This document shows, piece after piece, positions 1 through 14,297 of a DNA stretch of 14,966 nt; the stretch's first letter is position 1; the number at the start of each line of letters is the position of its first letter. The translations under genes were made by a program, and so were the position numbers. The DNA lies in IMG/VR virus record IMGVR_UViG_3300005856_000048, positions 1 to 14,966 of that record; one strand, written 5' to 3'. The notes beneath the pieces were generated by a model. It worked only from the letters and a program-made list of their open reading frames with translations. It ran no database searches and was not told the DNA's origin.

Positions 1-1898
1 CGTGTGAACCACCTGATGTATGCCCTTATTGCCACGTAGTCTTCCCACAGTTTAGCCCAGTCGTTGGGTATCCTCATTAATTGTATTATTTGCGGTAGCT
101 TATCCATGAATTGGGGTAAGTATTCACTTAACACGGGCATTTCTAAAATGGTGGGGTAGTATGGTGGGGAGTATGCCTTAACTAGGGCATTGGCGAAATC
201 AACGTCTATCCCGTTTGCTAACAATACCTGTAACGCATTCTCAGGTGTTGTTGCATGCCTACCTAGCCATATGCGGGCATAGGTTTCAAAGTTCCTTAGT
301 AAATATCTATGGTAGACTAGATTGGCTATGAATAGGAAGACTTCCCTTGCTTGCGGTGTTTCTCTCATTAACGTTGTTAATTCATCAATGTACTTGGGGA
401 TCTCTGTCTTTGGAATAAGCCCCATGCCTATTATACCCAGGATCCTATACAACGCATACCTTGCGTAGTACCTTATCCTACGGAATGTACCAATCAGTTG
501 CTCTACCTCAAAGTATTTGGCTATGGCGTCGTTGAATGCTGAATCCCAAGTTAGGTGCATTTCCGCACCTGTAATGGATTTGTACAGTGGTGCGTAGTAT
601 TTGTCTAACACAGTTGTGACGTAGCCAACCATATCGTTTATTGAGTCACTGATACCGATCAAGTAGTCTCTGACTCCTGCTAGTAATGCCCTAAACATGT
701 TGCTCATATACGTGTTCACCTTATCCATTAATGCCCTTAGCATTAGTAACTTAGATTCTGGTTCAATGTACCTCACGGGTGCGTTTAACCAACCCGTCAC
801 CCATTTCTGATTATACATGTCAAAGTAGGCTACGTGGACTGATACGGGGAACATGTTGTTCATCATTTGCAATGTGACGGGTATTAACTCTATGTTTTCT
901 CTAATTAGATTCAGCAATCCTGTCCTTAGTAGGGTTTTTGATGCTGTAGTGACGTCAAAGACGGCTCTTAGGGCTATTAATGGGGCTACGTATGGGTGGA
1001 AGCCCCTGGCCATTAACACGTTTGTGACGTAATCAGTGTATATTTGGATTGGTGACGTGGCTTGGGGTTCCACAACCTTACCCAGCACGTCATACATTGT
1101 TGTCTCGTTTGTGATCTTATACTCACGTTCATAGTAGTCCCATATACCATGCCTAACCAGGTGTTCAATGTCGGTTCTGTCTAATAGGTGTGCTGATTGG
1201 TCTATGATTAACCATGCATCGGATGTGTATGATTGACCTGTCCTTGGGTCGTTGATCCATGCAAAGTGAGCTCTACCATGCCATTTCTGATATTCCGCTA
1301 GGGCTAGCAGGGCTAGGTTGTATTGGAAGTTGAGTTTAGCGGGTACCTGTGGGGTGAATGCGTTGATGATTTTAGCTTCAGCTTCCGCAAAGGTTTGGAC
1401 TTCAGGTGGTGGGACATACCAGGCGAATCCCGATAATGCACGCATTGTAAAGTCCCATACCTGGGTTGCTGATGGCAATTCATAAGCCCTTAGGTAGTAC
1501 ATGTAGGCTACGTCGGGTGGAACACCCCTGGCCCACATTGCCTTGACAAACGACTGATATGCTAATGCGGGTTGCTGATTAGGTGGTGCTGATGCAGGTA
1601 GGAATAAGTCCCTTAGCATGAATTCAACCAGGTCGTGGGTAGTGGGTAATTCGAATAGTGGGGCAACAGGTAGGTATCTTACGTTGCCGAATTTATCAAC
1701 CACGGTGATTAAATTGTTTTGTATTTCCTTCCTGTAGTCACTTAATGCCTGGTTGGCAACGTCTATGGATGTGAATGCTGATGGTAATGCTATTGTCTTT
1801 GCAATGAACCAGTATGGGAAGCCTCTATAAATCATTGTATTTGCCACGTTGTTAATGTTCTGTGTGATATCAAACCTACGGGCTATGTCAAGTAATTC
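1..1898 (-). CDS. C-terminal part of the giant minor structural protein (alpha-helical repeats); runs off the left edge
   Basis: Manual translation gives a frame open from 1913 to base 1 (~630 codons): ELLDIARRFDITQNINNVANTMIYRGFPYW...LFELPTTHDLVEFMLRD...YELPSATQVWDFTMR...AIRAYIRWFT. Not in the ORF track, probably because it has no stop in the window. Independent starts are possible (GTG 1847, ATG 1835), but it more likely continues the 774-aa ORF via a -1 shift. Confidence 0.85.
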
Positions 1899-4207
1899 GT
1901 ATGTGACGGTAGTTCAAAGGGCATGTTGCCCATTCCCATTGAGTAGAATGTTAGCCACCACACGTAGCGCCACAGGTAGCGTAGCGGTTCCATGAATGCT
2001 AATGTTCCGCTTAGCGCCATGCCTCTTCCCAATTCATCGCCTAGTTTACCCAATAGATCACCGATTGGTTGTAGTAGTTTCCCTAGTTCTAAACGGATCT
2101 TTAGACCTATGCCTAATGGTGTTAAATCAACTTCCTGTGTCCCAGTTGCTGACCCTATTTTCTCGATTAGTTTCCCTAGGAAGTATATGGATGATGCTAT
2201 TGCGGTTGATATAATAGCCACCGCACCGAATGCGCCTGTTAGGTTTGGTATTGCTACTTTAACGGGGTCTACACCTGACTTTATTACGATGTATGGTTCA
2301 TTTTTGAACACGTCACGTGACATCATAGCGGGTATTTCGGTAATCATCACAGGTAGGAAGATGGCTTTCATTGCACCGTCCACAATACCCTTTGCGAAAT
2401 CCGTTATTCCACTTCCCAAGTTGCCTAAGCCACCTGCTAGCGTTTGCGCTAGTTTAATGAAACCTGAGCCTAGTCCCTGGATTTCATTGACTATCCAGTT
2501 GAATATGTCCTTTAGCGTGTCGTAGAATGACTTAAACGCATTCTCAAACCCCTTGCCGATTGACTCAAATAATTTGATTATTTGTTGCACTACTGGGTTT
2601 TTGCCTAGATTCTCAAAGAACTTGGCTACGTTGCTGAAGAAATCGGTGATTGCCTTGATGTTGATTGTTTTTAGGAAGTCCATGAATGCCTTATACACGG
2701 CGTCAAAGACTTCCTTGGGTATTTGGGATATTGTTTTTGGTAGGTTTTCTATTGCCTTTATGAATCCCTGGAATGACTTATTGATATCATTGAATAGTGT
2801 TTCAAACCCTGAACCTATGGTTCCCAAGTTGCTTACAATTGAACCACTGATTGACGTGAATGTTGCGGTTAATGCATTTGCGAATCCCTGGGCTTCCTTT
2901 ATGAATTTCTCAAAGTTTGACTCAATGCCTTTAACAAATCCCTCAATGTCCTTGCCTAGGGTTGTGAAAAAGCCCGTTACCTTACTGTATGCTTCCTTTC
3001 CGAAATTCTCAATGTCTTTGCCTATTGTTGTAAAGAATGATTCAACGTCTTTAATGAATCCTTGGATGTACTTGCCTGCATCTGTTAATGCACCGTATAT
3101 CATCTTGCCGAATGATTCAACGTCACTGATGAATTGTTTGAAATACTTGCCTGCTGTGTCTATGAAATCGCTAATGTACTTGCCGATTGCCGTGAATGTG
3201 TTCCTTATGTCGTTGCCTATGGTGGTGAACACATTGCTTAACGTGGATGCGAATGACTCAATGCCGTGTAGAATATCCGTTGCTATGTGGGTGAATGTTG
3301 ATTGGACTGTGGATGCGAATGACGTTATTGCGTTGATTGCCGTGGTTATGAATGACTCGATGCGTGGGAATACTATGGATTGTAATACGTGTGCGAATTG
3401 GGATAGTGCGTTTTGTATGGTTGATCCGATTGAGGTTATTGCGTTGATGATACTCGATACTGCATTTTGCACTACACCGCTGATCTGTGTTATGATGCCA
3501 CTTAGCGTTGATGTGAATGATGCGAATGCGGTTTGGATTGTTGATGCAATGCTTGATATTGTTGAAATCACACCTGATAGTGCGTTTTGGATTGATGAAA
3601 CTATGCTTGTTATTGTTGATACTATGCCCGATAGTGTTGATTGGATTGTTGATGATAATTGTGTGGCTAAGCCACCGATTGCCGATGCCAGGTTACTGAA
3701 TTGGCTTGATATTGTCGTTGCAATGCTACTTAAGCTTGATGCCAAGTTACTGAGCCCTGAGCTAACGGTTGATGCAATGCCTGATAATGCCGATGTTATG
3801 CTTGATGCCACGGATTGGAACGTGTTAGCTAAGTTACCTAACCCTGATTGGATTCCGCTTAATGCGCTTGATAATGATGAACTCAATGAGTTTAAAGCCG
3901 ATTGGACTGTTGATGATAGTGTTGATATTCCACTTGATACGTAACTCACGACACTGTTGATTGCGTTTATAACGGGCTGTAGCAATTGCTGAATCCCAGT
4001 TGTAATGTAGTTTGCTAGGTTTGTTAATTGTTGCGCTAGCCAATTTTCTAATTGCCCGATTGGATCAGTTAAGCCACCATATTCAACAATCGCATTGTTG
4101 ATGTCTTCCATTGTTAATTGTGATAATGCCTTCTCAATGATGCCGTTGTTTAGGTTGTTTTGGATTAGGATGCGTATTTCATCGGGATTAAAGAATGGGG
4201 TGTCCAT
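1883..4207 (-). CDS. N-terminal part of giant tape-measure-like / terminal filament protein (774 aa up to the frameshift)
   Basis: Long amphipathic S/T/A/G-rich, then F/K/D/E-rich quasi-repeats (TAGKYFKQFISDVESF / DAGKYIQGFIKDVESF; TIGKDIENFGK / TLGKDIEGFVK), followed by hydrophobic segments. ATG overlaps the upstream stop (TAATG). Confidence 0.8.
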   Translation of the reverse strand: MDTPFFNPDEIRILIQNNLNNGIIEKALSQLTMEDINNAIVEYGGLTDPIGQLENWLAQQLTNLANYITTGIQQLLQPVINAINSVVSYVSSGISTLSSTVQSALNSLSSSLSSALSGIQSGLGNLANTFQSVASSITSALSGIASTVSSGLSNLASSLSSIATTISSQFSNLASAIGGLATQLSSTIQSTLSGIVSTITSIVSSIQNALSGVISTISSIASTIQTAFASFTSTLSGIITQISGVVQNAVSSIINAITSIGSTIQNALSQFAHVLQSIVFPRIESFITTAINAITSFASTVQSTFTHIATDILHGIESFASTLSNVFTTIGNDIRNTFTAIGKYISDFIDTAGKYFKQFISDVESFGKMIYGALTDAGKYIQGFIKDVESFFTTIGKDIENFGKEAYSKVTGFFTTLGKDIEGFVKGIESNFEKFIKEAQGFANALTATFTSISGSIVSNLGTIGSGFETLFNDINKSFQGFIKAIENLPKTISQIPKEVFDAVYKAFMDFLKTINIKAITDFFSNVAKFFENLGKNPVVQQIIKLFESIGKGFENAFKSFYDTLKDIFNWIVNEIQGLGSGFIKLAQTLAGGLGNLGSGITDFAKGIVDGAMKAIFLPVMITEIPAMMSRDVFKNEPYIVIKSGVDPVKVAIPNLTGAFGAVAIISTAIASSIYFLGKLIEKIGSATGTQEVDLTPLGIGLKIRLELGKLLQPIGDLLGKLGDELGRGMALSGTLAFMEPLRYLWRYVWWLTFYSMGMGNMPFELPSHTNYLT

Positions 4208-4434
4208 TATCTTCCACCCCTGGCGATTTGCTTACCGTAGTTTGCCTTGGCTAACTCATACAGCATGATTTCCTGCATTATCTTTTTTTCTAATTCCTTG
4301 GTGTTGTGGAAGTCCAGGGGGAATGCGTTTGATACCCAATTATCATCATCATCAATAATTTGCACTGAGGCTATGTAGTGCGGATCCCATGGTACATTGG
4401 CTTTATGGATCTCTCTAATGATTACCTTAACCAC
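4207..4434 (-). CDS. Small hypothetical protein (75 aa) translationally coupled to the giant protein
   Basis: GTG start 24 nt downstream of the conserved 13-mer; its TAA overlaps the next ATG at 4207. Confidence 0.8.
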   Translation of the reverse strand: MVKVIIREIHKANVPWDPHYIASVQIIDDDDNWVSNAFPLDFHNTKELEKKIMQEIMLYELAKANYGKQIARGGR

Positions 4435-4457
4435 GGTTTTGAGAATTAATAAAGTTC

Positions 4458-4470
4458 AATTTATTTTTAA
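4458..4470 (-). promoter_or_regulatory. Conserved promoter motif TTAAAAATAAATT
   Basis: Exact consensus copy, 24 nt upstream of GTG 4434. Confidence 0.75.
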
Positions 4471-4493
4471 TGACAGGTGGGGTTAGTATTCGA

Positions 4494-5180
4494 TTATTTG
4501 GATGATCCAGTTGTCGTTTGACCTTGGCTTGGTTGCTGTGTTGGGAAAGGGGATGATGCTGGGGCTATGGTTGTTACTTCCACCTCAGGTGGCTTGGCGT
4601 ATTGTGCAAGTGTAGCCTTTAGTCTATCGCTCATTAATTGACGGATGTCATTATTAACTAACTGGAGACCGTAAAGTGACAGTAGCGTATTCATAAAGTA
4701 AATATTGTTATCAACCTGCTTATTGTAAATGTTTAAGTACCTGTCCTCAGTATAATGCCTATGCATAGTATCCTGTTGAATAAGTGAGAAATACTTATTA
4801 TCCATATCCATAGTGTGACGGGTTGATTCAGCATTGAGAGCCGTGGCTACGTTAAGAGCCGTGGTGGTAGCGGCCACCAACTGATTCATGTTATTAGTCT
4901 GTGAGTTTAGTGCTTGGATTTGGGCTTGGGTTAGCTGGGTTTGGTTGTTTGTGGTGTTGATGGACATGAATATGTAGACACCCAGTGCTATCACCACGGC
5001 TAGGATTAGTATGATGATGCCAGCTGTTATGGGGTCTATGTAGATAACATACCCATTGGATGTTGTTGTGGATTGTGCAAACACTATGTGTGGGTTAGCC
5101 ACCATTAACATGGCTATTATTGACATTACTACCGCTAACTTGCGCTTATCCATGCTTAGGAGACCTGTGAGTGGGTTCAT
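4494..5180 (-). CDS. Membrane protein (228 aa): signal-peptide-like N-terminus, TM helix, Q/N-rich helical region
   Basis: MDKRKLAVVMSIIAMLMVANPHIVFA|QS signal-like segment; hydrophobic ITAGIIILILAVVIALGVYIFMSI; P/T/Q/S-rich tail. Confidence 0.8.
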   Translation of the reverse strand: MNPLTGLLSMDKRKLAVVMSIIAMLMVANPHIVFAQSTTTSNGYVIYIDPITAGIIILILAVVIALGVYIFMSINTTNNQTQLTQAQIQALNSQTNNMNQLVAATTTALNVATALNAESTRHTMDMDNKYFSLIQQDTMHRHYTEDRYLNIYNKQVDNNIYFMNTLLSLYGLQLVNNDIRQLMSDRLKATLAQYAKPPEVEVTTIAPASSPFPTQQPSQGQTTTGSSK

Positions 5181-5206
5181 ATCGTTTTTAATTGACTGTG
5201 TTGTGT

Positions 5207-5219
5207 AATTTATTTTTAA
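5207..5219 (-). promoter_or_regulatory. Conserved promoter motif TTAAAAATAAATT
   Basis: Exact copy, 27 nt upstream of ATG 5180. Confidence 0.75.
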
Positions 5220-5228
5220 TCTGGGTAA

Positions 5229-6005
5229 CTATGGTTTGTTTAGCGGTGTTGGGTAGACCATTGAGCCACTGCACCCTGGGATTCCTGCTTTATCTATGAA
5301 CTGTATTAATAATGCGGGTTCTAGGAGGGCATACTTATCATCACCGTAATTGACAAAGGACTTCCCAACGTCTAAGCCGATTGCGTGTGTTACATAACCC
5401 CAGTATGTGCAATTTAACGTGAGTTTAACATTAACAAGCGCCTTCAAGTCATCCTCAGGCATGTTGGGTGTTGCTAACGCTATGCCTAGGCAATTTTGTT
5501 GGTTAGCGTATAGACAGTTGCCTGCAACGTAGATGGCTCTGGGGTATGGTTCATCGGTTTGGAAGTTGATTGGCGTTGGTGCTTGGAATGTGGCGTAGCC
5601 GTAGTCGTATGGTGACGGTATTTCAATGTTGAAAAAGAGTAGGATGTTCCATATCCATTGTGGGAAGGTGATGGGGTATGTGATTTGAATGTTGCTTAGC
5701 CTGTATGTTGCGTTGCCGTATTGTAAAGTGTCTACGCATTTCATGACATGCCCAGCACTAACAACCGTGTTATTCATTATTTCATAAACTGAGCCACCGC
5801 ATGAACCAGTCAATTTTGGGTATTCACCGTTTGCGTGAAAAAAATCACTCTCACTAATAATAACCTTCCTTCCCTTTTTATCATAGAGTCCATCGGCTTT
5901 TTGAATGAATATTCCCTTGGTTACTAGGTCTTGGATTGTTATGCCGTCCTTAAGCTGAATAACTATGGTTTTGTCTCCTTGGAATAGGGTTTTGAACCGT
6001 GGCAT
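5229..6005 (-). CDS. Chymotrypsin/trypsin-like serine protease (258 aa)
   Basis: SCGGS, VVSAGHV (His86), YDYGY (Asp134) and PGCSGSMVY (Ser246) occur in canonical order and spacing. GGTGA SD at 6009-6013. Confidence 0.75.
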   Translation of the reverse strand: MPRFKTLFQGDKTIVIQLKDGITIQDLVTKGIFIQKADGLYDKKGRKVIISESDFFHANGEYPKLTGSCGGSVYEIMNNTVVSAGHVMKCVDTLQYGNATYRLSNIQITYPITFPQWIWNILLFFNIEIPSPYDYGYATFQAPTPINFQTDEPYPRAIYVAGNCLYANQQNCLGIALATPNMPEDDLKALVNVKLTLNCTYWGYVTHAIGLDVGKSFVNYGDDKYALLEPALLIQFIDKAGIPGCSGSMVYPTPLNKP

Positions 6006-6028
6006 GGTTCACCTTACCCATGCCGTGT

Positions 6029-6041
6029 AATTTATTTTTAA
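6029..6041 (-). promoter_or_regulatory. Conserved promoter motif TTAAAAATAAATT
   Basis: Exact copy, 24 nt upstream of ATG 6005. 6025-6042 is identical over 18 nt to 5203-5220. Confidence 0.75.
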
Positions 6042-6068
6042 TTAAACAATACTACTTGGCTTAACGTT

Positions 6069-7112: not shown

Positions 7113-7134
7113 TGTGTTTAGTTGATTGGTGATG

Positions 7135-7147
7135 TATTTGTTTTTAA
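7135..7147 (-). promoter_or_regulatory. Promoter motif variant TTAAAAACAAATA
   Basis: 2 mismatches to consensus, 23 nt upstream of ATG 7112. Confidence 0.65.
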
Positions 7148-7151
7148 CCCG

Positions 7152-8933
7152 TCACTGTATGAATCCCTGGGTTAGTGTTGTTGATGGCATGTAGCCCTTG
7201 GGTACAAACTTGGCGTGGTATAGGTTCAGTGGGTTGTTGAACCACACCATTAATGCGTCCTGTGGTGCATCAACGTTAGCGTAGTGTAGGTCAAACCTGT
7301 GGGTTCCGAATGGTATGGTTGCCGTGTATGGTGTTGATTGCATGCTTTGATTTGTCCATGAGCTTAAAATGTTGCTTCCGCCTGATGCCCAATTAGCCCC
7401 ATCACTACCTAACTCACCTGTTAGGCTTAGCCACACGTTGATTGCATCATCAACAAGGACATACATTGTTGATTGTTTACTTGCCTGTACCCAACCGATG
7501 AATTTAGCTAGCCACGTGTAATTGGGGCTTATAGGTGAACCTACACCGCATGAATAGCCTGCTTCCCATGCACTTAACATGTTGGCTTGGCTTGTGCATG
7601 AACTTGATCTACAGTTTGAGTATGAGCCACCGCTTACGGTGCATGGTATTGTGGATGTGAATAGTGATGGTACTGTTTCACAACATTGTTGTAATGTAAC
7701 TGTGAGCGTCCACCCAGTTGAGCTAAACGTAAAGGATTGCGTATTCAAACTTGTTCCAAGCAATGGTTCAACTGTTGGTGAATACGCTACAGGAGGAACG
7801 GTTTGTGATGTGTTAGCCCATATGCTGTATAACAACCCCTGATCCATAATGTTACCGATGTTATCAGTGCTCAATGAACCAGTGATTGTTGAATTAATAC
7901 CGTAATTAACACCGTCAATTGTTGTTGTGTTAGTGGGTATCATGTATATTTGTGTTGATCCACTGTTAAGTTGATTAATCATTGTGTCCGTTGCCTTTAA
8001 CCAAACCACAGCTGTGCCATTGTTGTTTTTTGCATCAACCTCAACCCAGAATGGTACCTTATTCCCACTTGCATCTAGGATGTAAACGTTGCTTAAATCC
8101 TCATTAACGTTAATGTAATTTGACGGTTGAATGGCTATGGGTATTTGCTGGCCACTGGGGTATGTGTAGCCTGGGTTAGTTAATTTAATGACTATGGGTA
8201 GCCACTGTGTCATTGAATTAAGCATTTCATCAATTGCAAGTAGCGCCTCAGTGAGTTTATTCCAATCATGACTAGTCACAATATCGAAAGCTAACTTTCC
8301 GCTCATTTGCATGGGAACGTAGGCAATGGGGTTGAATATGCCTTGTAATTGGGTTGGAACCGTGTAATTGTAGCCGTAAAGGTATGTGAAATAGTAAATG
8401 AACGTGTTGTATGCAAGTAGAATGTGGTTCCAAATTGCATTGTAATGGTCGTGGCTAACTGGGTCACCTACCGTGACGGGTTTAAGCGTGTTCAACATGT
8501 CCATTATCACATTGTACTTTGACGTGAGGTACATTCCCGTGTTTTGATTAACCAGGTTGATTAATTGAATCAGTTGGTAAAGGTATTTGAGTTGGTTAAG
8601 CAGTATGGTGCGCCTATTGTTCCACACGGATGGTGGAATTGTTTGATTGGGGCAATGTGAATAGACTGTTACCCCACCTGAGAGTTGCGAGAAAATGTAG
8701 GGTATTGGGATGCAGACGGGTAGACTAAATGTGATTTTTGAACCAGGGGTTATGACACTCGATAGTGATGGTGGGAGTAGGGATGGTGGTATTGACGTTA
8801 CTACCTGCCTGGTTGGTGTTATTAATGTTTCACTTCCCACTCCTGAATCGCTTAGTGAGAATGCCGTGATTGTGACGCTTACACCACCGCTCGATGCGTC
8901 ACTTGTTACTACTGGATACGCTACGGTGCTCAT
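7152..8933 (-). CDS. Multidomain fibre/adhesin (593 aa): helical repeats, DUF2341, Cys-rich segment, PA14-like domain
   Basis: EDLSNVYILDASGNKVPFWVE...AVVWLK...IYM (DUF2341). AKFIGWV...MYVLVDDAINVWL...GTHRFDLHY...LMVWF (PA14-like, DD at 495-496). Start overlaps the upstream stop (ATGA). Confidence 0.75.
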   Translation of the reverse strand: MSTVAYPVVTSDASSGGVSVTITAFSLSDSGVGSETLITPTRQVVTSIPPSLLPPSLSSVITPGSKITFSLPVCIPIPYIFSQLSGGVTVYSHCPNQTIPPSVWNNRRTILLNQLKYLYQLIQLINLVNQNTGMYLTSKYNVIMDMLNTLKPVTVGDPVSHDHYNAIWNHILLAYNTFIYYFTYLYGYNYTVPTQLQGIFNPIAYVPMQMSGKLAFDIVTSHDWNKLTEALLAIDEMLNSMTQWLPIVIKLTNPGYTYPSGQQIPIAIQPSNYINVNEDLSNVYILDASGNKVPFWVEVDAKNNNGTAVVWLKATDTMINQLNSGSTQIYMIPTNTTTIDGVNYGINSTITGSLSTDNIGNIMDQGLLYSIWANTSQTVPPVAYSPTVEPLLGTSLNTQSFTFSSTGWTLTVTLQQCCETVPSLFTSTIPCTVSGGSYSNCRSSSCTSQANMLSAWEAGYSCGVGSPISPNYTWLAKFIGWVQASKQSTMYVLVDDAINVWLSLTGELGSDGANWASGGSNILSSWTNQSMQSTPYTATIPFGTHRFDLHYANVDAPQDALMVWFNNPLNLYHAKFVPKGYMPSTTLTQGFIQ

Positions 8934-9295
8934 GAACTGAGCACCTGTGTGACAAAGTAATACGGGTAGGATCTTGGTGTGCCACTAATCTGATTGATAG
9001 TTACTTTGATGCCCATGCCTGGTGGGATTTGCAACGTGTGGATTCTTAGGATTGCATTATTAACTGGTCCTGCGAATGTGCGTTGTAGGAACACGTAATA
9101 ATTCGTTCCATCCACTGTAACATAAACCGTGATGGTTGTTATGTCACCGTTTTGCATGTTTTGCAATGATAACCAACCCTCGATGATTGCGTCCGTTTGC
9201 CCACCGCTATATGTGAACACCGTAGTCTCAGTGTTTAAACTACTTAGTGATAATGTTCCGTTGGAATAACTGATTGAGTTTATTACAACTGGCAT
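8930..9295 (-). CDS. Beta-strand-rich hypothetical structural protein (121 aa)
   Basis: GGTGGTGA SD at 9299-9306; alternating hydrophobic beta pattern; coupled to the adhesin gene. Confidence 0.8.
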   Translation of the reverse strand: MPVVINSISYSNGTLSLSSLNTETTVFTYSGGQTDAIIEGWLSLQNMQNGDITTITVYVTVDGTNYYVFLQRTFAGPVNNAILRIHTLQIPPGMGIKVTINQISGTPRSYPYYFVTQVLSS

Positions 9296-9305
9296 GGTTC
9301 ACCAC

Positions 9306-9773
9306 CTATGAGATGCTTAGCGTCATTGTTACTTGCCATGTTTCACCAGGTTGCTTAATACCCATGTTTGCAACTAACCTATCGATCGGTATGTATCCGC
9401 AATTTTGCCCAACGTAGTTTGTAATGGCAACTGCTATTTCGTTCCATTGGAAGTTAGCCATTGTGTCCGTGAATGTTGCCGTGACGGATAGTTGATTATT
9501 GTTTATTGAAACTTGCCCAGGGCTTGAGCATGATTGGATTGAGCCCTGGAGACATGTTTGACTTGCCGATGCGGGTGTTGAACCGTTCCCAACGCATATG
9601 CCCAACGTGACGTTTGTTATGCTACCCACAACAATGTACCAAATTATTTCAACACCGTATGTGAGGAAGATATTACCCTCATAATGCTCAATTGACTTTA
9701 CTACACCGTTCCTATCCTTTTTAACAATGGTTACCTTTGCGGTTCCTTTACCGCTTTCACTATGGCTTACCAT
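9306..9773 (-). CDS. Protein resembling phage tail-collar/baseplate fibre-attachment domain (DUF3751-like), 155 aa
   Basis: Motif series NIFLTYG...ICVGNGSTPASASQTCL...ATFTDTMANFQWNEIAV...DRLVANMGIKQPGETWQVTMTLSI. GGTGA SD at 9780-9784. Confidence 0.6.
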   Translation of the reverse strand: MVSHSESGKGTAKVTIVKKDRNGVVKSIEHYEGNIFLTYGVEIIWYIVVGSITNVTLGICVGNGSTPASASQTCLQGSIQSCSSPGQVSINNNQLSVTATFTDTMANFQWNEIAVAITNYVGQNCGYIPIDRLVANMGIKQPGETWQVTMTLSIS

Positions 9774-9784
9774 TACCCGTCACC

Positions 9785-10426
9785 TCAGTTGCATGTTGAT
9801 GAATTTGTTAATTCCAACAATGCCCTAACGTAGCTGTAGTTCTCTGATCTCAGATAGATCTGGATGGCATCGCAAACGTCTATTTCAATTTGTGTTCCTG
9901 GGAAGATTGGGAAGTGTTGCCCACTTGCCCCACCCACGTAGACCACATAGGTCGTGTCCTGTGTGACATACAGTAGTGCACGCTTGATGGGTGTGCTTGT
10001 ACTTACTAACGATGTTGCCGTGGATAACACGGGTACTACAATGCTCATTAATGCGGTTGGTGAAACATACAGTTTAATTTTCTGAACCGTTTGCTGTACC
10101 TGTTGGACTGTGTTTTGAATGTTAATCAAATAGACTGAAATGTAATTGTAGATTTGATTGATTGCACCCTGCAAAAATTGAGCAATGTAGATGGGATCCA
10201 GGTCATGCAATACCTTATACCCTTCCACGTAAATCTCGTTTCCAAAGAATGCTGATCCAGCTGTGTATAATTCATCAAAGTATGGTGTGAATTGACCGTT
10301 TGTTAGGATGATGTTTGTGTAGTAATTCATTGTGTAGAGTTGATCCACGGCTGACACTAATGCATTCCAATCCGATGAACGCAATACCTGGAATGGCTGT
10401 TTGAATGGTACTCCGAATACGCTCAT
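9785..10426 (-). CDS. Hypothetical fibre-like structural protein (213 aa): SSDWNAL motif, short coiled coil, C-terminal beta domain
   Basis: First gene of a 4-gene unit with the 13-mer 25 nt upstream; INIQNTVQQVQQTVQKIK heptad segment. Confidence 0.75.
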   Translation of the reverse strand: MSVFGVPFKQPFQVLRSSDWNALVSAVDQLYTMNYYTNIILTNGQFTPYFDELYTAGSAFFGNEIYVEGYKVLHDLDPIYIAQFLQGAINQIYNYISVYLINIQNTVQQVQQTVQKIKLYVSPTALMSIVVPVLSTATSLVSTSTPIKRALLYVTQDTTYVVYVGGASGQHFPIFPGTQIEIDVCDAIQIYLRSENYSYVRALLELTNSSTCN

Positions 10427-10450
10427 AGCGTTGTAAAATTGAATAAAACT

Positions 10451-10463
10451 AATTTATTTTTAA
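10451..10463 (-). promoter_or_regulatory. Conserved promoter motif TTAAAAATAAATT
   Basis: Exact copy, 25 nt upstream of ATG 10426. Confidence 0.75.
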
Positions 10464-10478
10464 CCAGAATGAGGGGTG

Positions 10479-10784
10479 TTACTTAGCCCCTAACACATCC
10501 CTCAGTTCCTTAACCTTTTGGACTATTTTGCGTGCTTGCTTAACTACAGGGTGGTTAAGTAGATTGGGGTCATCTAGTGATGCTAATTCCAGGGATAAGT
10601 TGTATGCCTCAGTGACTAATTCCATTAGTTTATCTGTGAATGCCTTGGCTTTGGGGTCTATTGTTTGTTGTTGTAGTGATACATTGGGGATGACTGGGGT
10701 TGTTGTTGGTGTTGGTGGTGTTGTTATGGTGGGTGTCACAATGGACTGTCCTGTCCCTTGAACCCTGGTATCGGACTCAGACAT
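10479..10784 (-). CDS. Hypothetical protein (101 aa): T/P-rich N-terminus and helical hairpin
   Basis: TPTITTPPTPTTTP followed by two amphipathic helices; overlaps the 439-aa gene by 49 nt; TATA box 26 nt upstream. Confidence 0.75.
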   Translation of the reverse strand: MSESDTRVQGTGQSIVTPTITTPPTPTTTPVIPNVSLQQQTIDPKAKAFTDKLMELVTEAYNLSLELASLDDPNLLNHPVVKQARKIVQKVKELRDVLGAK

Positions 10785-12055
10785 ACCGTGCTAAGTAGAT
10801 TAAGCAGGGTATTTAAAGTACTCGGATCTAAACCAAAATTAACCCATTTACTTAGCCATGCCTGGTTGAATGCCTGTAATCCTATGCCTTCCCATGCCCT
10901 GTACCTAACCCTATCGTGATTGTGGTGGAATGCCATGCAGTATTCTACACCTGCATCCTCATATGCGTTAATCAAAAATGGGTTAGCCACCTTGTTCATC
11001 AACATGTTTCTGATTGTTTTTCTAATTGTTTTGATTAATTCCATTGCCCTACCCCACCTTTCCGCACGTGCTGTCAATGGTGCGAATGGTGCGTTTTCAA
11101 TAATGCCTGGGAATGCTTCCTGGAATAATTCCACTAAACTTGGTGGAATAGGTATGTTGGGTATTGCTGGGTCTATGAATGCCGTCTTAATCGCCGTTTG
11201 CAATGGTGAATAATTGTTTTGGACGGCTTCACCAATGCGCCCCACTAACCGTGCGAAATTGAGATTAACCATTGGAACGGGTTCATCAATGAAATACTCA
11301 CCATCCAGGGGGTTCCAATCCAGGACAGTACCCCATAATGCCTGGTCTATCACGGCAAAATGCGGGTATGCGGTTTTTCCGTTTAGTTCACTGATTGTTG
11401 TTAGCCATTGATAAGGCAACACAACATACAGTGGGTTGGTTACGGATTCTGGGGCGAATTGCGAGAAATCAAGTATCATGACGTCCATTGGTGTGGATTT
11501 CTCAATAATCTGCATCACAGTGTTCAACATCTTATTAGCGTAGATGGAAAATCCCTGGTTCACATCCACACCTTGCAAAAATGATGGGGTTGTCATGTTG
11601 CGTGAAACCTTGTTGATTGCTGAACGTAACCATTGCTTAATGTTCACTACCGTGAGCCCTGGATCATAGTAACTATAATCGAATACTGATTGACCGAATA
11701 TAGCCTTTGTGATTTGAGTCTGACTGTAGTTGCTTTGAGCTTCTGGGGCTACAACCGTGATGTTTGGAATGCTAAATGGTGAAATGTTTAGGCTTTGCAG
11801 GTAGTTTGAGAAATCTGGGAATGTGATGTTTATGCCCTGCCACGTGAAATCATCAAACTGGATTGGTACACCTAATGAGATTGCGAATAGGAAGTCTAAC
11901 AATAGTGATGTTTCCATTTCAAAGTTGAATGGGAAGAATTGTATCGTGACACGGCTTGGTAGTACCGTGACGTCTTGCTTATTATTCAGGGTAACCTTAG
12001 CCTGGTGTACACCACCCGTCCCAAAGAGATTATAACTTTGGACTGGGGTGGCCAT
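10736..12055 (-). CDS. Minor virion protein (439 aa) with probable C-terminal MCP-like helical domain
   Basis: Starts 3 nt after the glycosyltransferase stop; AIFGQSVFDYSYYDP motif; C-terminus aligns by eye with the MCP (FGLDPSTLNTL vs YGANPTILQAI). Confidence 0.7.
   Translation of the reverse strand: MATPVQSYNLFGTGGVHQAKVTLNNKQDVTVLPSRVTIQFFPFNFEMETSLLLDFLFAISLGVPIQFDDFTWQGINITFPDFSNYLQSLNISPFSIPNITVVAPEAQSNYSQTQITKAIFGQSVFDYSYYDPGLTVVNIKQWLRSAINKVSRNMTTPSFLQGVDVNQGFSIYANKMLNTVMQIIEKSTPMDVMILDFSQFAPESVTNPLYVVLPYQWLTTISELNGKTAYPHFAVIDQALWGTVLDWNPLDGEYFIDEPVPMVNLNFARLVGRIGEAVQNNYSPLQTAIKTAFIDPAIPNIPIPPSLVELFQEAFPGIIENAPFAPLTARAERWGRAMELIKTIRKTIRNMLMNKVANPFLINAYEDAGVEYCMAFHHNHDRVRYRAWEGIGLQAFNQAWLSKWVNFGLDPSTLNTLLNLLSTVCLSPIPGFKGQDSPL
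10810..10817 (-). promoter_or_regulatory. Canonical archaeal TATA box TTTAAATA inside the 439-aa gene
   Basis: 26 nt upstream of ATG 10784, the same spacing as the other promoters. Confidence 0.45.
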
Positions 12056-12058
12056 TGG

Positions 12059-13108
12059 CTACTCGATGTATTTAACTATTTTAGAGTATAAATTTGTAAT
12101 CGTCATGTCTTTCACGGTATCGTAAGCACGCTTAGCCCTTTCCTCATATTCACCGCTCTTAGCCATATCCACGGCATTAACTATGGCATCGGCTAGGTAC
12201 TGTGGGTCATAGTCATGTAACTCGAATTCTACACCGTTATCAACAATTTCCTTAATGTTATCCCATGGGAAGGTAATGTTGGCTTTAACATCAGCAAACT
12301 CATTGAATGGTTCCATGTTCACGAAAATGGCTAATCTACCTAATGAGTTTGCTTCCAAGACGGGTAGTCCAAATCCTTCCGCAAGCGATGGAACTAGTAC
12401 ATAATCCGCTAGTTTGAATAAGGCAAGGACTTGTTTCCTTGCCATTTGCCCGAATTGCCCCACAACGTAAATTGAATCCTTTGGGGCGTTGGGTAGGACT
12501 TTTTCCATGGTGGGTTTGTCGGCTATGGCAAGTACAATAAACTTTGACCTAACATTCTCGGGTATTTTGTTTAATGCATCAACTAGTTTATGCCAACCCT
12601 TGCGTAGGTGGGATCCTTCCGCTATTGCGAAAATTACCTTGCCTGGGAAGTCACGTTCAATCTTTTTCCTTAGGAATTCGGCATACTCGGTGGCTTCCCT
12701 GTTTTCATCGGGATCATATGCATGGTGGACAATATCCAAAACGTGGTAACCCACCTCACTTAGCTTGTTTGCTGTGTACATCGAGTTTGCGATAAAGTCA
12801 ATGTTGTACCACACGGGGTATCGGGATGGTTCACCATAGGGTGTACCTTCCGTTGTCCCATACCATGCTTGTTTAAGTGATTTTGCGTAGATTTTGTTTG
12901 TTGAATATTGCCCAGCATACCTACCACTCATGGTGGTATTGACAGGGAAAATCCATAGGATGGCGTTTGGACGGTAGAAAAGGAAGTCCTGGTGGATGTA
13001 GTCACTCGATACTTTCACGTCATGCCCCATTGCCCTTGCCACTTTGGCGATGTGTGAGGCTACTATGCTTAGGCTTGGTGCTTTAGCGTGTACAATCATT
13101 AATTTCAT
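12059..13108 (-). CDS. GT4 (GT-B fold) glycosyltransferase (349 aa)
   Basis: FIANS, LRKGW and ADYVLVPSLAEGFGLPVLEA (EX7E signature); adjacent to the MCP gene. Confidence 0.93.
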   Translation of the reverse strand: MKLMIVHAKAPSLSIVASHIAKVARAMGHDVKVSSDYIHQDFLFYRPNAILWIFPVNTTMSGRYAGQYSTNKIYAKSLKQAWYGTTEGTPYGEPSRYPVWYNIDFIANSMYTANKLSEVGYHVLDIVHHAYDPDENREATEYAEFLRKKIERDFPGKVIFAIAEGSHLRKGWHKLVDALNKIPENVRSKFIVLAIADKPTMEKVLPNAPKDSIYVVGQFGQMARKQVLALFKLADYVLVPSLAEGFGLPVLEANSLGRLAIFVNMEPFNEFADVKANITFPWDNIKEIVDNGVEFELHDYDPQYLADAIVNAVDMAKSGEYEERAKRAYDTVKDMTITNLYSKIVKYIE

Positions 13109-13131
13109 GATTGTGGAAGGAAAAAAGGATG

Positions 13132-13144
13132 AATTAATTTTTAA
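13132..13144 (-). promoter_or_regulatory. Promoter motif variant TTAAAAATTAATT
   Basis: 1 mismatch to consensus, 24 nt upstream of ATG 13108. Confidence 0.7.
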
Positions 13145-13168
13145 CTGTTTGATTAGGCTATTGGCTCA

Positions 13169-13555
13169 TTAGTATGATAGACCGCTAACACCCAATGCCT
13201 GGGCAATGGCCTGTAGTATGGTTGGGTTAGCACCGTAAGCGGTCTGGAAGTAAGACGTGAGACCGTTCACCTCATTGGCAAGTGCTGGACCTGTGATACG
13301 TTGTGTCGCATGCCAAACCTTTTCACCAAAGGCTATGTAAACGGCTCTAGTTGGGCCAGCTACACCATACTGATCGAGTATGCCACCTACCAGGAACTGT
13401 ACATTTGCAACGCTTACTATACCCTCCTGTGCCCTGCTTACGGCAACTGGCTGTACTTCAGTGAACCTGGTTTGAACTACTGTAGGGTCGTATTTGGCCT
13501 GCCACTTAGCGAGCCTTGCATTTCCTGGCTTGGGTAAGCCCCTACCCCTGGCCAT
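13169..13555 (-). CDS. Major capsid protein, SIRV2-type alpha-helical fold (128 aa from ATG 13555)
   Basis: MARG...RLAKWQAKY-DPTV...ILDQYGVAGPTRAVYIAFGEKV...GPALANEVNGL...AYGANPTILQAI parallels the recalled SIRV coat protein (RYAKWQAKF...VLTQYGITGPNRAIYQGFGLKV...GPALVNMINGL...AFNANPQVL). ATG 13555 is preferred over the track's TTG 13564. Confidence 0.93.
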   Translation of the reverse strand: MARGRGLPKPGNARLAKWQAKYDPTVVQTRFTEVQPVAVSRAQEGIVSVANVQFLVGGILDQYGVAGPTRAVYIAFGEKVWHATQRITGPALANEVNGLTSYFQTAYGANPTILQAIAQALGVSGLSY

Positions 13556-13580
13556 ATTGGTCAAAAACCTTATCCGCCAT

Positions 13581-13593: not shown

Positions 13594-13740
13594 GTTATTC
13601 TTTTACACTGTGCTTAATGCTCAATATTACTTACAATTACTTATGATTAATGCTAATCATTCATTATGTATTGGGATTACATGCTTTCATGGGTTGTGTT
13701 GGGGCTTGTAACAGGGGTTATGTGTACATTGTTTGCGTGA

Positions 13741-13753
13741 TTAAAAATAAAAT
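13741..13753 (+). promoter_or_regulatory. Promoter motif variant TTAAAAATAAAAT
   Basis: 1 mismatch, plus strand, 23 nt before in-frame GTG 13776. Confidence 0.65.
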
Positions 13754-13784
13754 ACTGACTGTGTGTGTTTCCCAGGTGGTGTAT

Positions 13785-13994
13785 GTGAGTGATGGGGATG
13801 CAAGGAATAGGCGCATAATGATACTTTCGAATGTGGAAACACGACCATCGAAACTTGTTAGTGGGCTTGTTTCCTACATATCGAAATACCTCATTAGTGT
13901 TGATTATGAGATTCATCAACGTTATGATGGGAATGATGTAGTGATTGAGGTTAGGATTAAGAATCTTGCCGAAATGATCAATAAGTATGGTTAA
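13785..13994 (+). CDS. Small alpha/beta hypothetical protein (~69 aa; start GTG 13785 or 13776, not 13650)
   Basis: Promoter motif at 13741 and GGTGGTG SD-like sequence at 13775-13781 place the start here. Apparent paralog of the next gene. Confidence 0.7.
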   Translation: MSDGDARNRRIMILSNVETRPSKLVSGLVSYISKYLISVDYEIHQRYDGNDVVIEVRIKNLAEMINKYG

Positions 13995-14003
13995 AAATAA
14001 ATA
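13991..14003 (+). promoter_or_regulatory. Promoter motif variant TTAAAAATAAATA
   Basis: Overlaps the upstream stop codon; 25 nt before ATG 14028. Confidence 0.7.
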
Positions 14004-14027
14004 GATGCTTACGTTTTTTAAAACGCT

Positions 14028-14255: not shown

Positions 14256-14297
14256 TGACGGTTATAGAGTTAAATAGTTTTGTTTAAAATTAAAATC

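What the first reader, a model, noticed from the sequence alone, without database searches (positions are those of the whole stretch)
1..13555. Helical-capsid archaeal virus with a tailed-phage-like adsorption module
Seen: one co-oriented cluster sharing a promoter motif joins a SIRV2-type MCP to a tape-measure-like giant protein, a tail-collar/baseplate-like protein, two lectin-bearing DUF2341 adhesins, a serine protease and a membrane protein. Known: the SIRV2-type MCP defines Adnaviria, which coat A-form DNA in helical virions; Sulfolobales rudiviruses have simple ends with three fibres made from a few minor proteins. Inference: this is a divergent Tokiviricetes lineage with a more complex, chimeric terminal organelle, partly built from domains typical of Caudoviricetes tails. 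AGG-rich codons and moderate GC would fit a Thermoproteales host, but that is a weak inference.
Basis: partly seen in the sequence, partly recalled or inferred. Interest (0 to 1): 0.85.

Follow-up and report, generated by a model that had tools for sequence, protein, structure and literature searches.

The report
Rudivirus-like virion gene cluster
This is the particle-building gene block of an uncultivated rod-shaped archaeal virus from Yellowstone hot springs, a distant cousin of the Sulfolobus rudiviruses. Nearly all of its supposedly phage-tail-like parts are ordinary rudivirus end-fibre genes, and only one small gene is truly shared with tailed phages.

Summary
The window is the whole IMG/VR contig 3300005856_000048. 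Its minus-strand cluster is real: 14 tightly packed genes, and a 12-nt motif (TTAAAAAYWAAT) sits upstream of six of them (7 hits in the window, 0.02 expected).

The SIRV2-type capsid protein is confirmed. It is only 34-44% identical to Rudiviridae capsid proteins, which share 61-94% among themselves.

The "tailed-phage-like" reading mostly fails. Profile and transitive searches show the cluster is the standard rudiviral virion set:
- capsid protein and glycosyltransferase;
- homologues of P488, ORF269, ORF309, P564 (DUF2341) and P1070.

The "tape-measure-like" giant is the P1070 tail-fibre orthologue. A 1-nt deletion breaks it here and the contig end cuts it; relatives have 1438-1856 aa. SIRV2 P1070 hits tape-measure profiles too, so that feature is ancestral and has expanded here.

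The protease has a chymotrypsin-like fold with a His-Asp-Ser triad. Its nearest structural relatives are in lipothrixviruses and tristromaviruses (AFV3 ORF267b, PFV1 VP3), not phages.

Only g09 (155 aa) belongs to a family from tailed-phage tail modules, where it sits beside LamG/DUF2341 proteins. It lies in a cassette that is swapped among relatives.

A 26.8-kb relative has 589-bp terminal inverted repeats and no detectable rudiviral replication genes. This is a new lineage of a known kind.

The parts
1..1898 (-). g01: C-terminal part (more than 632 aa) of the giant P1070-type fibre protein. It is in another frame from g02 because of a 1-nt deletion, and the contig end truncates it.
   Evidence: This frame has no stops. 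Relatives carry it in frame with g02, at 85-94% identity. The C-terminal region of the relatives' giant aligns to the C-terminus of the rudiviral P1070 family: hhalign 98.4%, E 6e-15.
1883..4207 (-). g02: N-terminal 774 aa of the giant P1070-type protein. It has about 560 aa of Ser/Thr-rich helical repeats and a hydrophobic segment at residues 656-681.
   Evidence: PHROG tape-measure families hit at up to 2.9e-37, and phrog_7334 (the SIRV P1070 family) at 1.8e-30. Local tblastn to the SIRV2 ORF1070 N-terminus gives 1e-8. Repeats show 11/18/29/40/58-residue periodicity.
4207..4434 (-). g03: 75-aa protein specific to this lineage, first gene of the promoter-led unit with the giant gene.
   Evidence: Conserved in relatives at 64-93% identity. 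No family hit.
4494..5180 (-). g04: 228-aa membrane protein with a signal-like segment, one transmembrane helix and a Ser/Thr/Pro-rich tail.
   Evidence: Hydrophobic segments at residues 15-33 and 54-72. Conserved at 38-92% identity in relatives.
5229..6005 (-). g05: 258-aa chymotrypsin-fold serine protease with an N-terminal domain of about 60 aa.
   Evidence: AF2 model has pLDDT 89. PDB fold hits are all chymotrypsin-type proteases. Best viral fold hits are a Betalipothrixvirus 267-aa protein (1.8e-6), PFV1 VP3 (3.3e-5) and a TTV1 20-kDa protein. His86, Asp134 and Ser246 are invariant in 19 homologues and align with the triad of AFV3 ORF267b.
6069..7112 (-). g06: 347-aa P564-type (DUF2341) protein, a candidate receptor-binding protein.
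   Evidence: hhalign to the rudiviral P564 family gives 98.8%, E 7e-17. phrog_7548 hits at 8e-13. It is present only in the cassette variant shared with 3300033781 and WOZZ01003805.
7152..8933 (-). g07: 593-aa protein. It has a conserved helical N-domain (residues 75-245, ORF309-like) and a variable DUF2341/lectin-like C-part.
   Evidence: hhalign of the N-part to the SIRV2 ORF309 family gives 84%, E 8e-6. Pfam DUF2341 gives E 0.002. The best Foldseek hit is the SBRV1 DUF2341 protein, 1.2e-5. Relatives with the other cassette keep only the N-domain, as proteins of 206-226 aa.
8930..9295 (-). g08: 121-aa beta-rich protein with no detectable relatives, part of the variable cassette.
   Evidence: Found only with the cassette, at 93% identity in 3300033781. 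No match in phage records or family libraries.
9306..9773 (-). g09: 155-aa member of a protein family from tailed-virus tail modules (phrog_23653).
   Evidence: phrog_23653 hits at 2.9e-19. Full-length homologues occur in phages SP-15, LIS04, PhiF1 (two copies) and REQ1. The family has more than 2200 members. In tailed-phage contigs the gene lies directly upstream of Laminin_G_3/DUF2341 proteins.
9785..10426 (-). g10: 213-aa homologue of SIRV2 ORF269 (gp42), a conserved rudiviral protein.
   Evidence: hhalign gives 99.3%, E 1.4e-20. phrog_7221 hits at 1e-23.
10479..10784 (-). g11: 101-aa protein with a Thr/Pro-rich N-part and a helical C-part, specific to this lineage.
   Evidence: Conserved at 60-95% identity in relatives. 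No family hit.
10736..12055 (-). g12: 439-aa distant homologue of the rudiviral minor structural protein P488.
   Evidence: Direct hhalign is weak: 25%, E 8e-4, with shared LDWNPLD and W..KW motifs. A profile search found 51 relatives. The intermediates hit the P488 HMM at 1e-10, and SMRV1 orf20, annotated 'structural protein', at 4e-11.
12059..13108 (-). g13: GT4-type glycosyltransferase, orthologue of SIRV2 ORF335.
   Evidence: Pfam Glycos_transf_1 gives 3.9e-11. hhalign gives 99.9%.
13169..13552 (-). g14: SIRV2-type major capsid protein, 127 aa from the ATG. The ORF extends to 13564 if a TTG start is used.
4459..13144 (-). Six copies of the promoter motif TTAAAAAYWAAT, at 4459-4470, 5208-5219, 6030-6041, 7136-7147, 10452-10463 and 13133-13144. 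A seventh copy lies on the plus strand at 13991-14002.
   Evidence: 7 hits against 0.02 expected. The motif is conserved in relatives.
13650..14966 (+). Divergently transcribed genes outside the finding: g15 (114 aa), g16 (75 aa) and g17, a partial glycosyltransferase orthologous to SIRV2 ORF356.

Best explanation
The cluster is the virion (late) gene block of an uncultivated, probably non-enveloped, rod-shaped virus. The virus belongs to a new lineage of Ligamenvirales outside the present Rudiviridae.

Shown:
- A single SIRV2-type capsid protein, two glycosyltransferases (one in the cluster and one divergently transcribed beside it), and homologues of every rudiviral minor virion protein (P488, P564, P1070) and of conserved ORF269 and ORF309. 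In the window these lie in five or six short transcription units led by a lineage-specific TATA-like motif.
- Relatives have a linear genome with terminal inverted repeats and a replication module unrelated to that of rudiviruses.

Inferred mechanism:
- Capsid dimers coat the DNA into a rod.
- The two ends are closed by a complex of g12, g10 and the helical N-domain of g07.
- The giant P1070-type protein forms the terminal fibres. Its hendecad-based helical region is about 3-4 times longer than in SIRV2, so longer fibres are predicted.
- The cassette g09-g08-g07C-g06 carries the receptor-binding domains (DUF2341/LamG-like) and sets host specificity. Close relatives carry a different cassette.
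- g09 is a partner protein of such adhesins and is shared with tailed viruses.
- g05 is a serine protease of a type shared with lipothrixviruses and tristromaviruses. It may process virion proteins or be packaged, as PFV1 VP3 is.
For: - Capsid protein.
- Homology to the rudiviral virion set. ORF269 scores 99.3%, P564 98.8%, ORF309 84%, and the glycosyltransferases 99.9-100%. The P1070 C-terminus scores 98.4%, E 6e-15, and the P1070 HMM hits relatives' giants at 1e-24 to 1e-46. P488 is linked through intermediates.
- Promoter motif.
- The synteny recurs in six independent assemblies.
- Cassette replacement between g10 and g05.
- g09 family and its adjacency to LamG/DUF2341 proteins in tailed phages.
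- Protease.
- Terminal inverted repeat of 589 bp at 98% identity.
- No rudiviral replication genes.
- Literature: ORF1070 is the SIRV2 tail-fibre protein, which binds type IV pili (PMC7911016).
Against: - No particle, proteomic or host data exist, so every structural role is transferred from SIRV2 by homology.
- The giant gene is frameshifted and truncated in this contig. This particular genome may be defective, or the assembly may be wrong at that base.
- The g12-P488 link is weak when tested directly (25%).
- The ORF309 link covers only about 145 residues.
- Six genes (g03, g04, g08, g09, g11 and the protease g05) have no rudiviral counterpart, so the end structure may differ from SIRV2.
- The membrane protein, and a protease related to the PFV1 sheath protein VP3, leave room for an envelope or sheath.
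Confidence: 0.8

Rival explanations
1. One reading: a helical-capsid virus whose ends carry a chimeric adsorption organelle built largely from tailed-phage tail components (tape measure, collar or baseplate, adhesins).
For: g02 hits many tape-measure PHROGs, best E 2.9e-37. g09 is a true member of a tailed-virus family that sits next to baseplate or tail-fibre genes. DUF2341/LamG and PA14-like domains are common in phage fibres.
Against: The tape-measure-like region is a property of the whole rudiviral P1070 family, and the giant is colinear with P1070 at both ends. The relatives have no portal, terminase, HK97-type capsid, tail tube, baseplate or collar family. Six of the putative organelle proteins have rudiviral orthologues. 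The protease is of the lipothrixvirus/tristromavirus type.
Confidence: 0.12
2. It is simply a new genus within Rudiviridae, and nothing here lies beyond family-level variation.
For: There is a single capsid gene, terminal inverted repeats, a full set of rudiviral virion proteins and both glycosyltransferases. One relative shares a PAPS reductase with SBRV1.
Against: Capsid identity is 34-44%, against 61-94% within the family. ORF131b, ORF436, the ORF207 Cas4 nuclease, the ORF121 resolvase, the ORF158a methyltransferase, DUF1874 and others were not detected in the relatives, which include a 26.8-kb contig bounded by terminal repeats and two further contigs of about 26 kb. The promoter motif is not shared.
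Confidence: 0.25
3. The virion is an enveloped or sheathed filament of the lipothrixvirus or tristromavirus type rather than a naked rod.
For: g05 shares its fold with PFV1 structural protein VP3 and with a betalipothrixvirus protein. g04 is a membrane protein.
Against: There is only one capsid gene per genome. From general knowledge, enveloped Adnaviria use two paralogous capsid proteins (see also PMC10848311). The capsid protein matches only rudiviral structures and records.
Confidence: 0.08
4. The cluster is an assembly chimera.
For: There is a single-base frameshift in the giant gene.
Against: The same gene order appears in five other independent assemblies from different samples. GC content is uniform at 0.40-0.46.
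Confidence: 0.02

Closest known systems
Rudiviridae virion module (SIRV2 P134, ORF335, P488, ORF269, ORF309, P564, P1070, ORF356)
   Same: All eight have homologues here. There is a single SIRV2-type capsid protein, and relatives have a linear genome with terminal inverted repeats. P1070-type giant proteins carry N-terminal helical repeats, a hydrophobic segment and a conserved C-terminal domain.
   Different: Capsid identity is only 34-44%. The genes are gathered in one co-oriented block, whereas in SIRV2 they are scattered on both strands. The giant protein is 1438-1856 aa, against 1064-1115 aa. Additional genes are present: a protease, a membrane protein, g09, g08, g11 and g03. No rudiviral replication or repair genes were detected. 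The promoter motif differs.
Betalipothrixvirus ORF267b (AFV3), PFV1 structural protein VP3, and the TTV1 20.2-kDa protein
   Same: These are the best structural matches of g05 among viral proteins. The His-Asp-Ser triad aligns with AFV3 ORF267b, including the C-terminal IPGxSGxxVY motif.
   Different: No sequence similarity is detectable by BLAST. The triad was not checked for PFV1 VP3 or the TTV1 protein. Those viruses are enveloped and have two capsid proteins.
Tail tape measure proteins of Caudoviricetes
   Same: Both have long Ser/Thr/Ala-rich helical repeats with 11-residue-based periodicity and a hydrophobic segment. HMM hits to many tape-measure families are significant.
   Different: The tailed-phage gene context is absent. 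Both ends of the protein are homologous to rudiviral P1070, an external fibre protein. The similarity is confined to the repetitive region and may reflect composition or convergence.
phrog_23653 family (Bacillus phage SP-15 gp058, Listeria phage LIS04_80, Methanothermobacter virus PhiF1 ORF44 and ORF46)
   Same: g09 aligns over its full length at 28-32% identity with conserved motifs. As in tailed phages, it lies just upstream of DUF2341/LamG-type proteins.
   Different: Here the host genome is an adnavirus. The family's function is unknown, and it has no Pfam or PDB relative.
Recently proposed metagenomic Ligamenvirales families (Chiyouviridae, Demeterviridae, Gaiaviridae)
   Same: All are uncultivated hot-spring rod-shaped viruses with SIRV2-like capsid proteins. 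Chiyouvirus also has a P1070 homologue (PMC10848311).
   Different: Chiyouvirus and Demeterviridae encode two or more capsid proteins, and the two Demeterviridae genomes listed are 30-40 kb. None of the contig ids of this clade appears in the stored supplement of the Demeterviridae preprint, although those files were cut when stored. Identity with any of these families was not established.

Membership tests
Adnaviria / SIRV2-type major capsid protein | Sequence membership of Pfam PF12193 (Sulf_coat_C) above the curated cut-off | tested here: met
   E 1.3e-25, 90.5 bits against a cut-off of 25.2.
Adnaviria / SIRV2-type major capsid protein | Homology to capsid proteins with solved helical-virion structures | tested here: met
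   6WQ0 at 2.2e-23, 3J9X at 3.9e-23 and 3F2E at 2.8e-16. The alignment is colinear, with one 4-residue gap.
Adnaviria / SIRV2-type major capsid protein | Capsid dimers wrap A-form dsDNA in a helical virion | not testable with these tools
   This needs cryo-EM of particles.
Rudiviridae | A single capsid protein (homodimeric capsomer), with no second virion capsid paralogue | tested here: met
   The capsid HMM, which includes the SSRV1 paralogue, hits exactly one ORF per related genome.
Rudiviridae | Linear dsDNA genome with long terminal inverted repeats | tested here: met
   A 589-bp repeat at 98% identity reaches both ends of the 26,805-bp relative. The window itself lacks genome ends.
Rudiviridae | Minor virion proteins P1070, P564 and P488 | tested here: met
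Rudiviridae | Conserved replication and repair core (ORF131b, ORF436 ATPase, ORF207 Cas4 nuclease, ORF121 resolvase, ORF158a methyltransferase, DUF1874) | tested here: not met
   Neither HMMs of these families nor tblastn finds a hit in the relatives: one complete 26.8-kb genome and large parts of two contigs of about 26 kb.
Rudiviridae | Capsid protein identity within the range seen among genera of the family | tested here: not met
   34-44% to all six genera sampled, against 61-94% among them.
Caudoviricetes tail tape measure protein | Significant match to tape-measure profiles | tested here: met
   phrog_58 at 2.9e-37 and more than 15 other tape-measure families. Pfam Tape_meas_lam_C falls just below its cut-off, 22.3 against 23 bits. 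The matches are confined to the repeat region.
Caudoviricetes tail tape measure protein | Encoded within a tail module of a virus with an HK97-type capsid, portal and terminase | tested here: not met
   None of these genes occurs in the window or its relatives. The protein is colinear with rudiviral P1070.
Chymotrypsin-like (PA clan) serine protease | Double beta-barrel fold | tested here: met
   The model has pLDDT 89. All top PDB hits are proteases of this fold, with probability about 1.0, although E-values are only about 4e-4 and TM-scores 0.3-0.44.
Chymotrypsin-like (PA clan) serine protease | His, Asp, Ser in that order, with Ser in a G-x-S-G motif, conserved across homologues | tested here: met
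   His86, Asp134 and Gly244-Cys-Ser246-Gly-Ser248 are invariant in 19 sequences. They align with TAWH, LDYD and GDSGG of AFV3 ORF267b.
Chymotrypsin-like (PA clan) serine protease | Proteolytic activity | not testable with these tools
   This needs expression and an assay.
DUF2341 (PF10102) proteins / rudiviral P564 family | Pfam DUF2341 above the curated cut-off | tested here: inconclusive
   g07 scores 19.0 bits and g06 14.4 bits against a cut-off of 23.4. Six of 12 family members hit at E 0.05 or better, the best at 7.6e-5.
DUF2341 (PF10102) proteins / rudiviral P564 family | Homology to SIRV2 P564 | tested here: met
   g06 hhalign gives 98.8%. The best Foldseek hit of g07 is the SBRV1 DUF2341 protein at 1.2e-5.
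Phage tail-collar / baseplate proteins (PF07484, PF12571, baseplate J and similar) | Match of any window protein to these families | tested here: not met
   There are no hits even at E of 5 or less. Only one of 40 g09-family members touches PF12571, at E 0.07.
phrog_23653 (small protein of tailed-virus tail modules) | Full-length profile match and conserved motifs | tested here: met
   E 2.9e-19. The alignment with the phage proteins is A6.

The most novel reading that the evidence does not exclude
A host-recognition cassette has been exchanged across virus realms. It consists of a small phrog_23653-type protein followed by DUF2341/LamG adhesins, and it would have moved between tailed viruses (Duplodnaviria) and a rod-shaped adnavirus. 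It now plugs into a conserved rudivirus-type end complex through the ORF309-like N-domain of g07. In addition, the hendecad-repeat region of P1070-type fibre proteins would be a true relative of phage tape measures, and its 3-4-fold expansion here would set fibre length.
Probability: 0.25. Interest if true: 0.65.

Novelty: new member of a known kind. Interest (0 to 1): 0.4.

Why it matters
- It adds a family-level or genus-level branch to the archaea-specific realm Adnaviria. The branch joins a complete rudivirus-type virion module to a replication module unrelated to that of rudiviruses. This shows that the virion module moves as a unit.
- It gives annotations that seem to be missing from public records:
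  - g12-type proteins are P488 homologues.
  - AFV3 ORF267b and its relatives look like chymotrypsin-like proteases with an intact triad. They may be related to the PFV1 sheath protein VP3.
  - A family of more than 2200 small proteins is a regular neighbour of LamG/DUF2341 fibres in tailed phages.
- The swapped cassette marks where host range is probably decided in these viruses.

Tried and rejected
- Megablast of the whole window against 50,697 phage and archaeal-virus records found nothing.
- tblastn of g12, g01, g05 and g08 against the same records found nothing.
- Lenient Pfam scans of all unassigned proteins gave no tail-collar, baseplate or protease family.
- PDB sequence searches with the g05 and g09 profiles found nothing useful.
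- Scans of GTDB genomes for a host clue failed. The protease profile found nothing. The capsid profile found only rudivirus contamination in bacterial assemblies.
- No tRNA genes were found.
- The sigma-70 promoter and terminator scans gave fewer hits than chance, so they do not apply.
- g08 shows no similarity to the small genes next to g09 homologues in phages.
- g06 and g07 show no direct similarity to the phage LamG proteins.
- Programmed frameshifting in the giant gene was considered and rejected. There is no slippery run at the site, and all four relatives are in frame.
- Identity with Demeterviridae or Gaiaviridae was considered. No contig id of this clade occurs in the stored supplements, but those files are truncated.
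- PFV1 could not be fetched under the two accession numbers tried, so the triad of VP3 was not examined.
- The g07 model has confidence only for residues 75-335, so the lectin assignment of its C-terminus was not pursued.

Full report
**What is there**

The window is the complete IMG/VR contig IMGVR_UViG_3300005856_000048. From position 1 to 13564 all real genes lie on the minus strand and cover 97% of the sequence. I number them from the left:

| Gene | Coordinates | Size |
|---|---|---|
| g01 | 1-1898 | open frame running off the contig end |
| g02 | 1883-4207 | 774 aa |
| g03 | 4207-4434 | 75 aa |
| g04 | 4494-5180 | 228 aa |
| g05 | 5229-6005 | 258 aa |
| g06 | 6069-7112 | 347 aa |
| g07 | 7152-8933 | 593 aa |
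| g08 | 8930-9295 | 121 aa |
| g09 | 9306-9773 | 155 aa |
| g10 | 9785-10426 | 213 aa |
| g11 | 10479-10784 | 101 aa |
| g12 | 10736-12055 | 439 aa |
| g13 | 12059-13108 | 349 aa |
| g14 | 13169-13552 | 127 aa |

To the right, three genes run the other way. They include a second glycosyltransferase that is cut by the contig end.

Long plus-strand ORFs inside g02, for example 2553-3944, are by-products of its repetitive sequence. The antisense ORFs in the relatives' giant genes are fragmented, and the coding-strand protein is the one conserved.

**The promoter motif is real**

TTAAAAAYWAAT occurs seven times against 0.02 expected from shuffles. Every copy is intergenic, with 22-38 nt between it and the start codon. 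The copies precede g03, g04, g05, g06, g10, g13 and plus-strand g16.

Genes without the motif abut or overlap the gene before them. This gives the transcription units g13-g12-g11, g10-g09-g08-g07, g06, g05, g04 and g03-giant.

The motif sits at the homologous positions in every related contig, and in two relatives it also precedes the capsid gene. It is essentially absent from six rudivirus genomes. It looks like an archaeal TATA/BRE element. Sigma-70-type sites are fewer than chance.

**The capsid protein and the lineage**

g14 is a SIRV2-type capsid protein:
- Pfam PF12193 gives E 1.3e-25.
- PDB 6WQ0 and 3J9X match at about 1e-23.
- It is colinear with rudiviral capsid proteins apart from a 4-residue gap.
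- In annotated virus records it matches only Rudiviridae, 42 records.

Its identity to six rudiviral genera is 34-44%. Those genera share 61-94% with each other, and the five members of the new clade share 90-97%.

Five further independent assemblies carry the same gene order:
- four Yellowstone-type IMG/VR contigs;
- GenBank WOZZ01003805.1.

This excludes a chimera.

One relative, 3300026625_000003, is 26,805 bp long. It has a 589-bp inverted repeat at 98% identity reaching both ends, with short tandem repeats inside. That marks a complete linear genome of rudiviral architecture. According to the supplement of preprint 10.1101/2025.08.23.671958, metagenome 3300026625 is a virus-fraction sample from a Yellowstone microbial mat, labelled BED_Mat_virus_6_15.

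HMMs of twenty rudiviral gene families and tblastn with all ORFs of six rudiviruses and AFV3 find only these in the relatives: the capsid protein, two glycosyltransferases, P1070, P564, ORF269, weakly ORF309, and a PAPS reductase in one relative. They find no rudiviral ssDNA-binding protein, ATPase, Cas4 nuclease, resolvase, methyltransferase or DUF1874. Each genome has a single capsid gene.

So the clade has a rudivirus-type virion module on a different replication backbone.

**The "tape-measure-like giant"**

g02 and g01 are one gene. An alignment with four relatives shows a single missing base near window position 1890. All relatives read through in frame. Their proteins are 1856 aa in two contigs, with a duplicated C-terminal domain of about 270 aa, or 1438 aa. 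There is no slippery sequence at the site. I take the deletion to be an error or a defective variant, not programmed frameshifting.

g02 does hit many tape-measure PHROGs (best 2.9e-37), and also phrog_7334, the SIRV P1070 family (1.8e-30). The relatives' full-length proteins align to the rudiviral P1070 family at both ends. The C-terminal 270 residues score 98.4%, E 6e-15, and the P1070 HMM hits them at 1e-24 to 1e-46.

SIRV2, SSRV1 and SBRV1 P1070 themselves hit the same tape-measure families through their N-terminal 30-230 residues, at 1e-6 to 1e-12. The repeat region of g02 covers about residues 60-620. It is Ser/Thr/Ala/Ile-rich with periodicities of 11, 18, 29, 40 and 58 residues, which are hendecad-based helices. 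A hydrophobic segment follows.

The tape-measure likeness is therefore an inherited feature of P1070-type proteins that has expanded 3-4-fold here. ORF1070 is the SIRV2 tail-fibre protein, which binds type IV pili (PMC7911016). I infer that the fibres are proportionally longer, about 0.15 nm per helical residue, which gives several tens of nm.

**The other "organelle" genes**

- g10 is the homologue of SIRV2 ORF269 (99.3%).
- g06 matches the C-terminal two-thirds of P564, which RefSeq annotates as a DUF2341 protein (98.8%).
- The confident helical domain of g07 (residues 75-245, pLDDT 85-96) matches the ORF309/ORF379 family, which lies next to P1070 or P564 in rudiviruses (84%, E 8e-6).
- The middle of g07 carries a weak DUF2341 signal. 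The best Foldseek hit of its model is the SBRV1 DUF2341 protein, at 1.2e-5. PA14, GLEYA and ConA-like phage domains follow at marginal E-values.
- g12 matched P488 only weakly in a direct comparison. An exhaustive profile search then found 51 relatives. The intermediates, for example P0150 at 1.8e-132 to g12 and P0153, hit the P488 HMM at 1e-10. They also hit SMRV1 orf20, annotated "structural protein", at 4e-11.

All known rudiviral virion proteins are thus represented.

**The protease**

g05 has 20 metagenomic homologues with invariant His86, Asp134 and Gly-Cys-Ser246-Gly-Ser. The AF2 model has pLDDT 89.

Every top PDB match is a chymotrypsin-fold protease: NAL1, MarP, DegQ/HtrA and 3C proteases.

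Against predicted viral structures the best matches are not phage proteins:
- a 267-aa Betalipothrixvirus protein (1.8e-6);
- PFV1 structural protein VP3 (3.3e-5);
- a TTV1 20-kDa protein (4.6e-4).

AFV3 ORF267b aligns with g05 at all three triad positions and ends in IPGDSGGAVY, against IPGCSGSMVY in g05. This is a protease type shared among filamentous archaeal viruses. It may be virion-associated.

**The one tailed-virus gene**

g09 (phrog_23653, 2.9e-19) has full-length homologues in annotated records only in tailed viruses:
- Bacillus phage SP-15;
- Listeria phage LIS04, directly after the Vgr/PAAR/baseplate-J genes;
- Methanothermobacter virus PhiF1, two copies among the large tail genes;
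- Rhodococcus phage REQ1.

The family has more than 2200 members and no Pfam or PDB relative.

On two metagenomic tailed-phage contigs the gene lies directly upstream of proteins of about 950-970 aa carrying Laminin_G_3 domains. One of these also has DUF2341 and is followed by a PHROG "tail protein". The window shows the same adjacency, with g09 upstream of the DUF2341 proteins g07 and g06. I found no direct sequence similarity between those phage proteins and g06 or g07.

g09, g08, the C-part of g07 and g06 form a cassette present in three assemblies. In the other three, two unrelated shorter genes replace it, and only the ORF309-like N-domain of g07 is kept. This is the pattern expected of an exchangeable receptor-binding module on a conserved anchor.

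**Verdict**

The adsorption module is the ordinary rudiviral one with three changes:
- an enlarged fibre protein;
- a lipothrixvirus/tristromavirus-type protease;
- one small gene, with perhaps a domain cassette, shared with tailed viruses.

The host remains unknown. AGG-rich Arg codons (47%) and 42% GC are confirmed, but no genome or spacer evidence was obtainable. I found no published description of this clade in the papers searched. I could not exclude that it is covered by a recent metagenomic survey.

Noticed in passing
L026 (NZ_BAAAUT010000071.1, Planomonospora alba JCM 9373, 31,951-bp contig); L024, L025, L027: Rudivirus-type capsid genes sit on contigs of bacterial isolate assemblies: two Streptomyces, Planomonospora and Paenochrobactrum. 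One contig is the size of a rudivirus genome. This looks like library cross-contamination with a Sulfolobus rudivirus.
   Followed up: no
window 1880-1900: A single-base deletion relative to four relatives splits the giant fibre gene into two frames. There is no slippery sequence at the site.
   Followed up: yes
L033 21710-22513 (AFV3 ORF267b): This gene is annotated 'conserved hypothetical protein', but it ends in a canonical GDSGG serine-protease motif, and its His and Asp align with g05. Betalipothrixviruses probably encode an unrecognised chymotrypsin-like protease. The PFV1 sheath protein VP3 has a similar predicted fold.
   Followed up: partly
L014 11906-12709: In the 1856-aa version of the giant protein, the C-terminal domain of about 270 aa is duplicated. 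The copies are 29% identical, E 1e-30.
   Followed up: partly
L005 1-589 and L014 16950-17538: The terminal inverted repeat of the 26.8-kb relative contains arrays of degenerate units of about 12 nt (TAATCTTGATGT-like), reminiscent of rudiviral termini.
   Followed up: partly
L022 (WOZZ01003805.1): This more distant relative has 35% GC, against 41-42% in the others. Its protease gene lies before the P564-like gene rather than after it. It also carries a PAPS reductase 38% identical to that of SBRV1.
   Followed up: no
L005 1969-2781: Relatives encode a Methyltransf_23 protein (E 9.5e-10). UbiG-like methyltransferases were reported for the proposed Demeterviridae. The relationship was not checked.
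   Followed up: no
L032 (Thermosphaera sp. MAG contig JBRCNI010000021.1): One of the closest g09 homologues outside the clade (39% identity) lies on a 5-kb contig binned with a hyperthermophilic archaeon. A 571-aa repeat protein follows it. None of the neighbouring genes hits any PHROG, so the kind of element is unknown.
   Followed up: partly
window 2553-3944 (+): A 463-aa antisense ORF lies inside g02. It is an artefact of the low-complexity repeat region, not a gene.
   Followed up: yes
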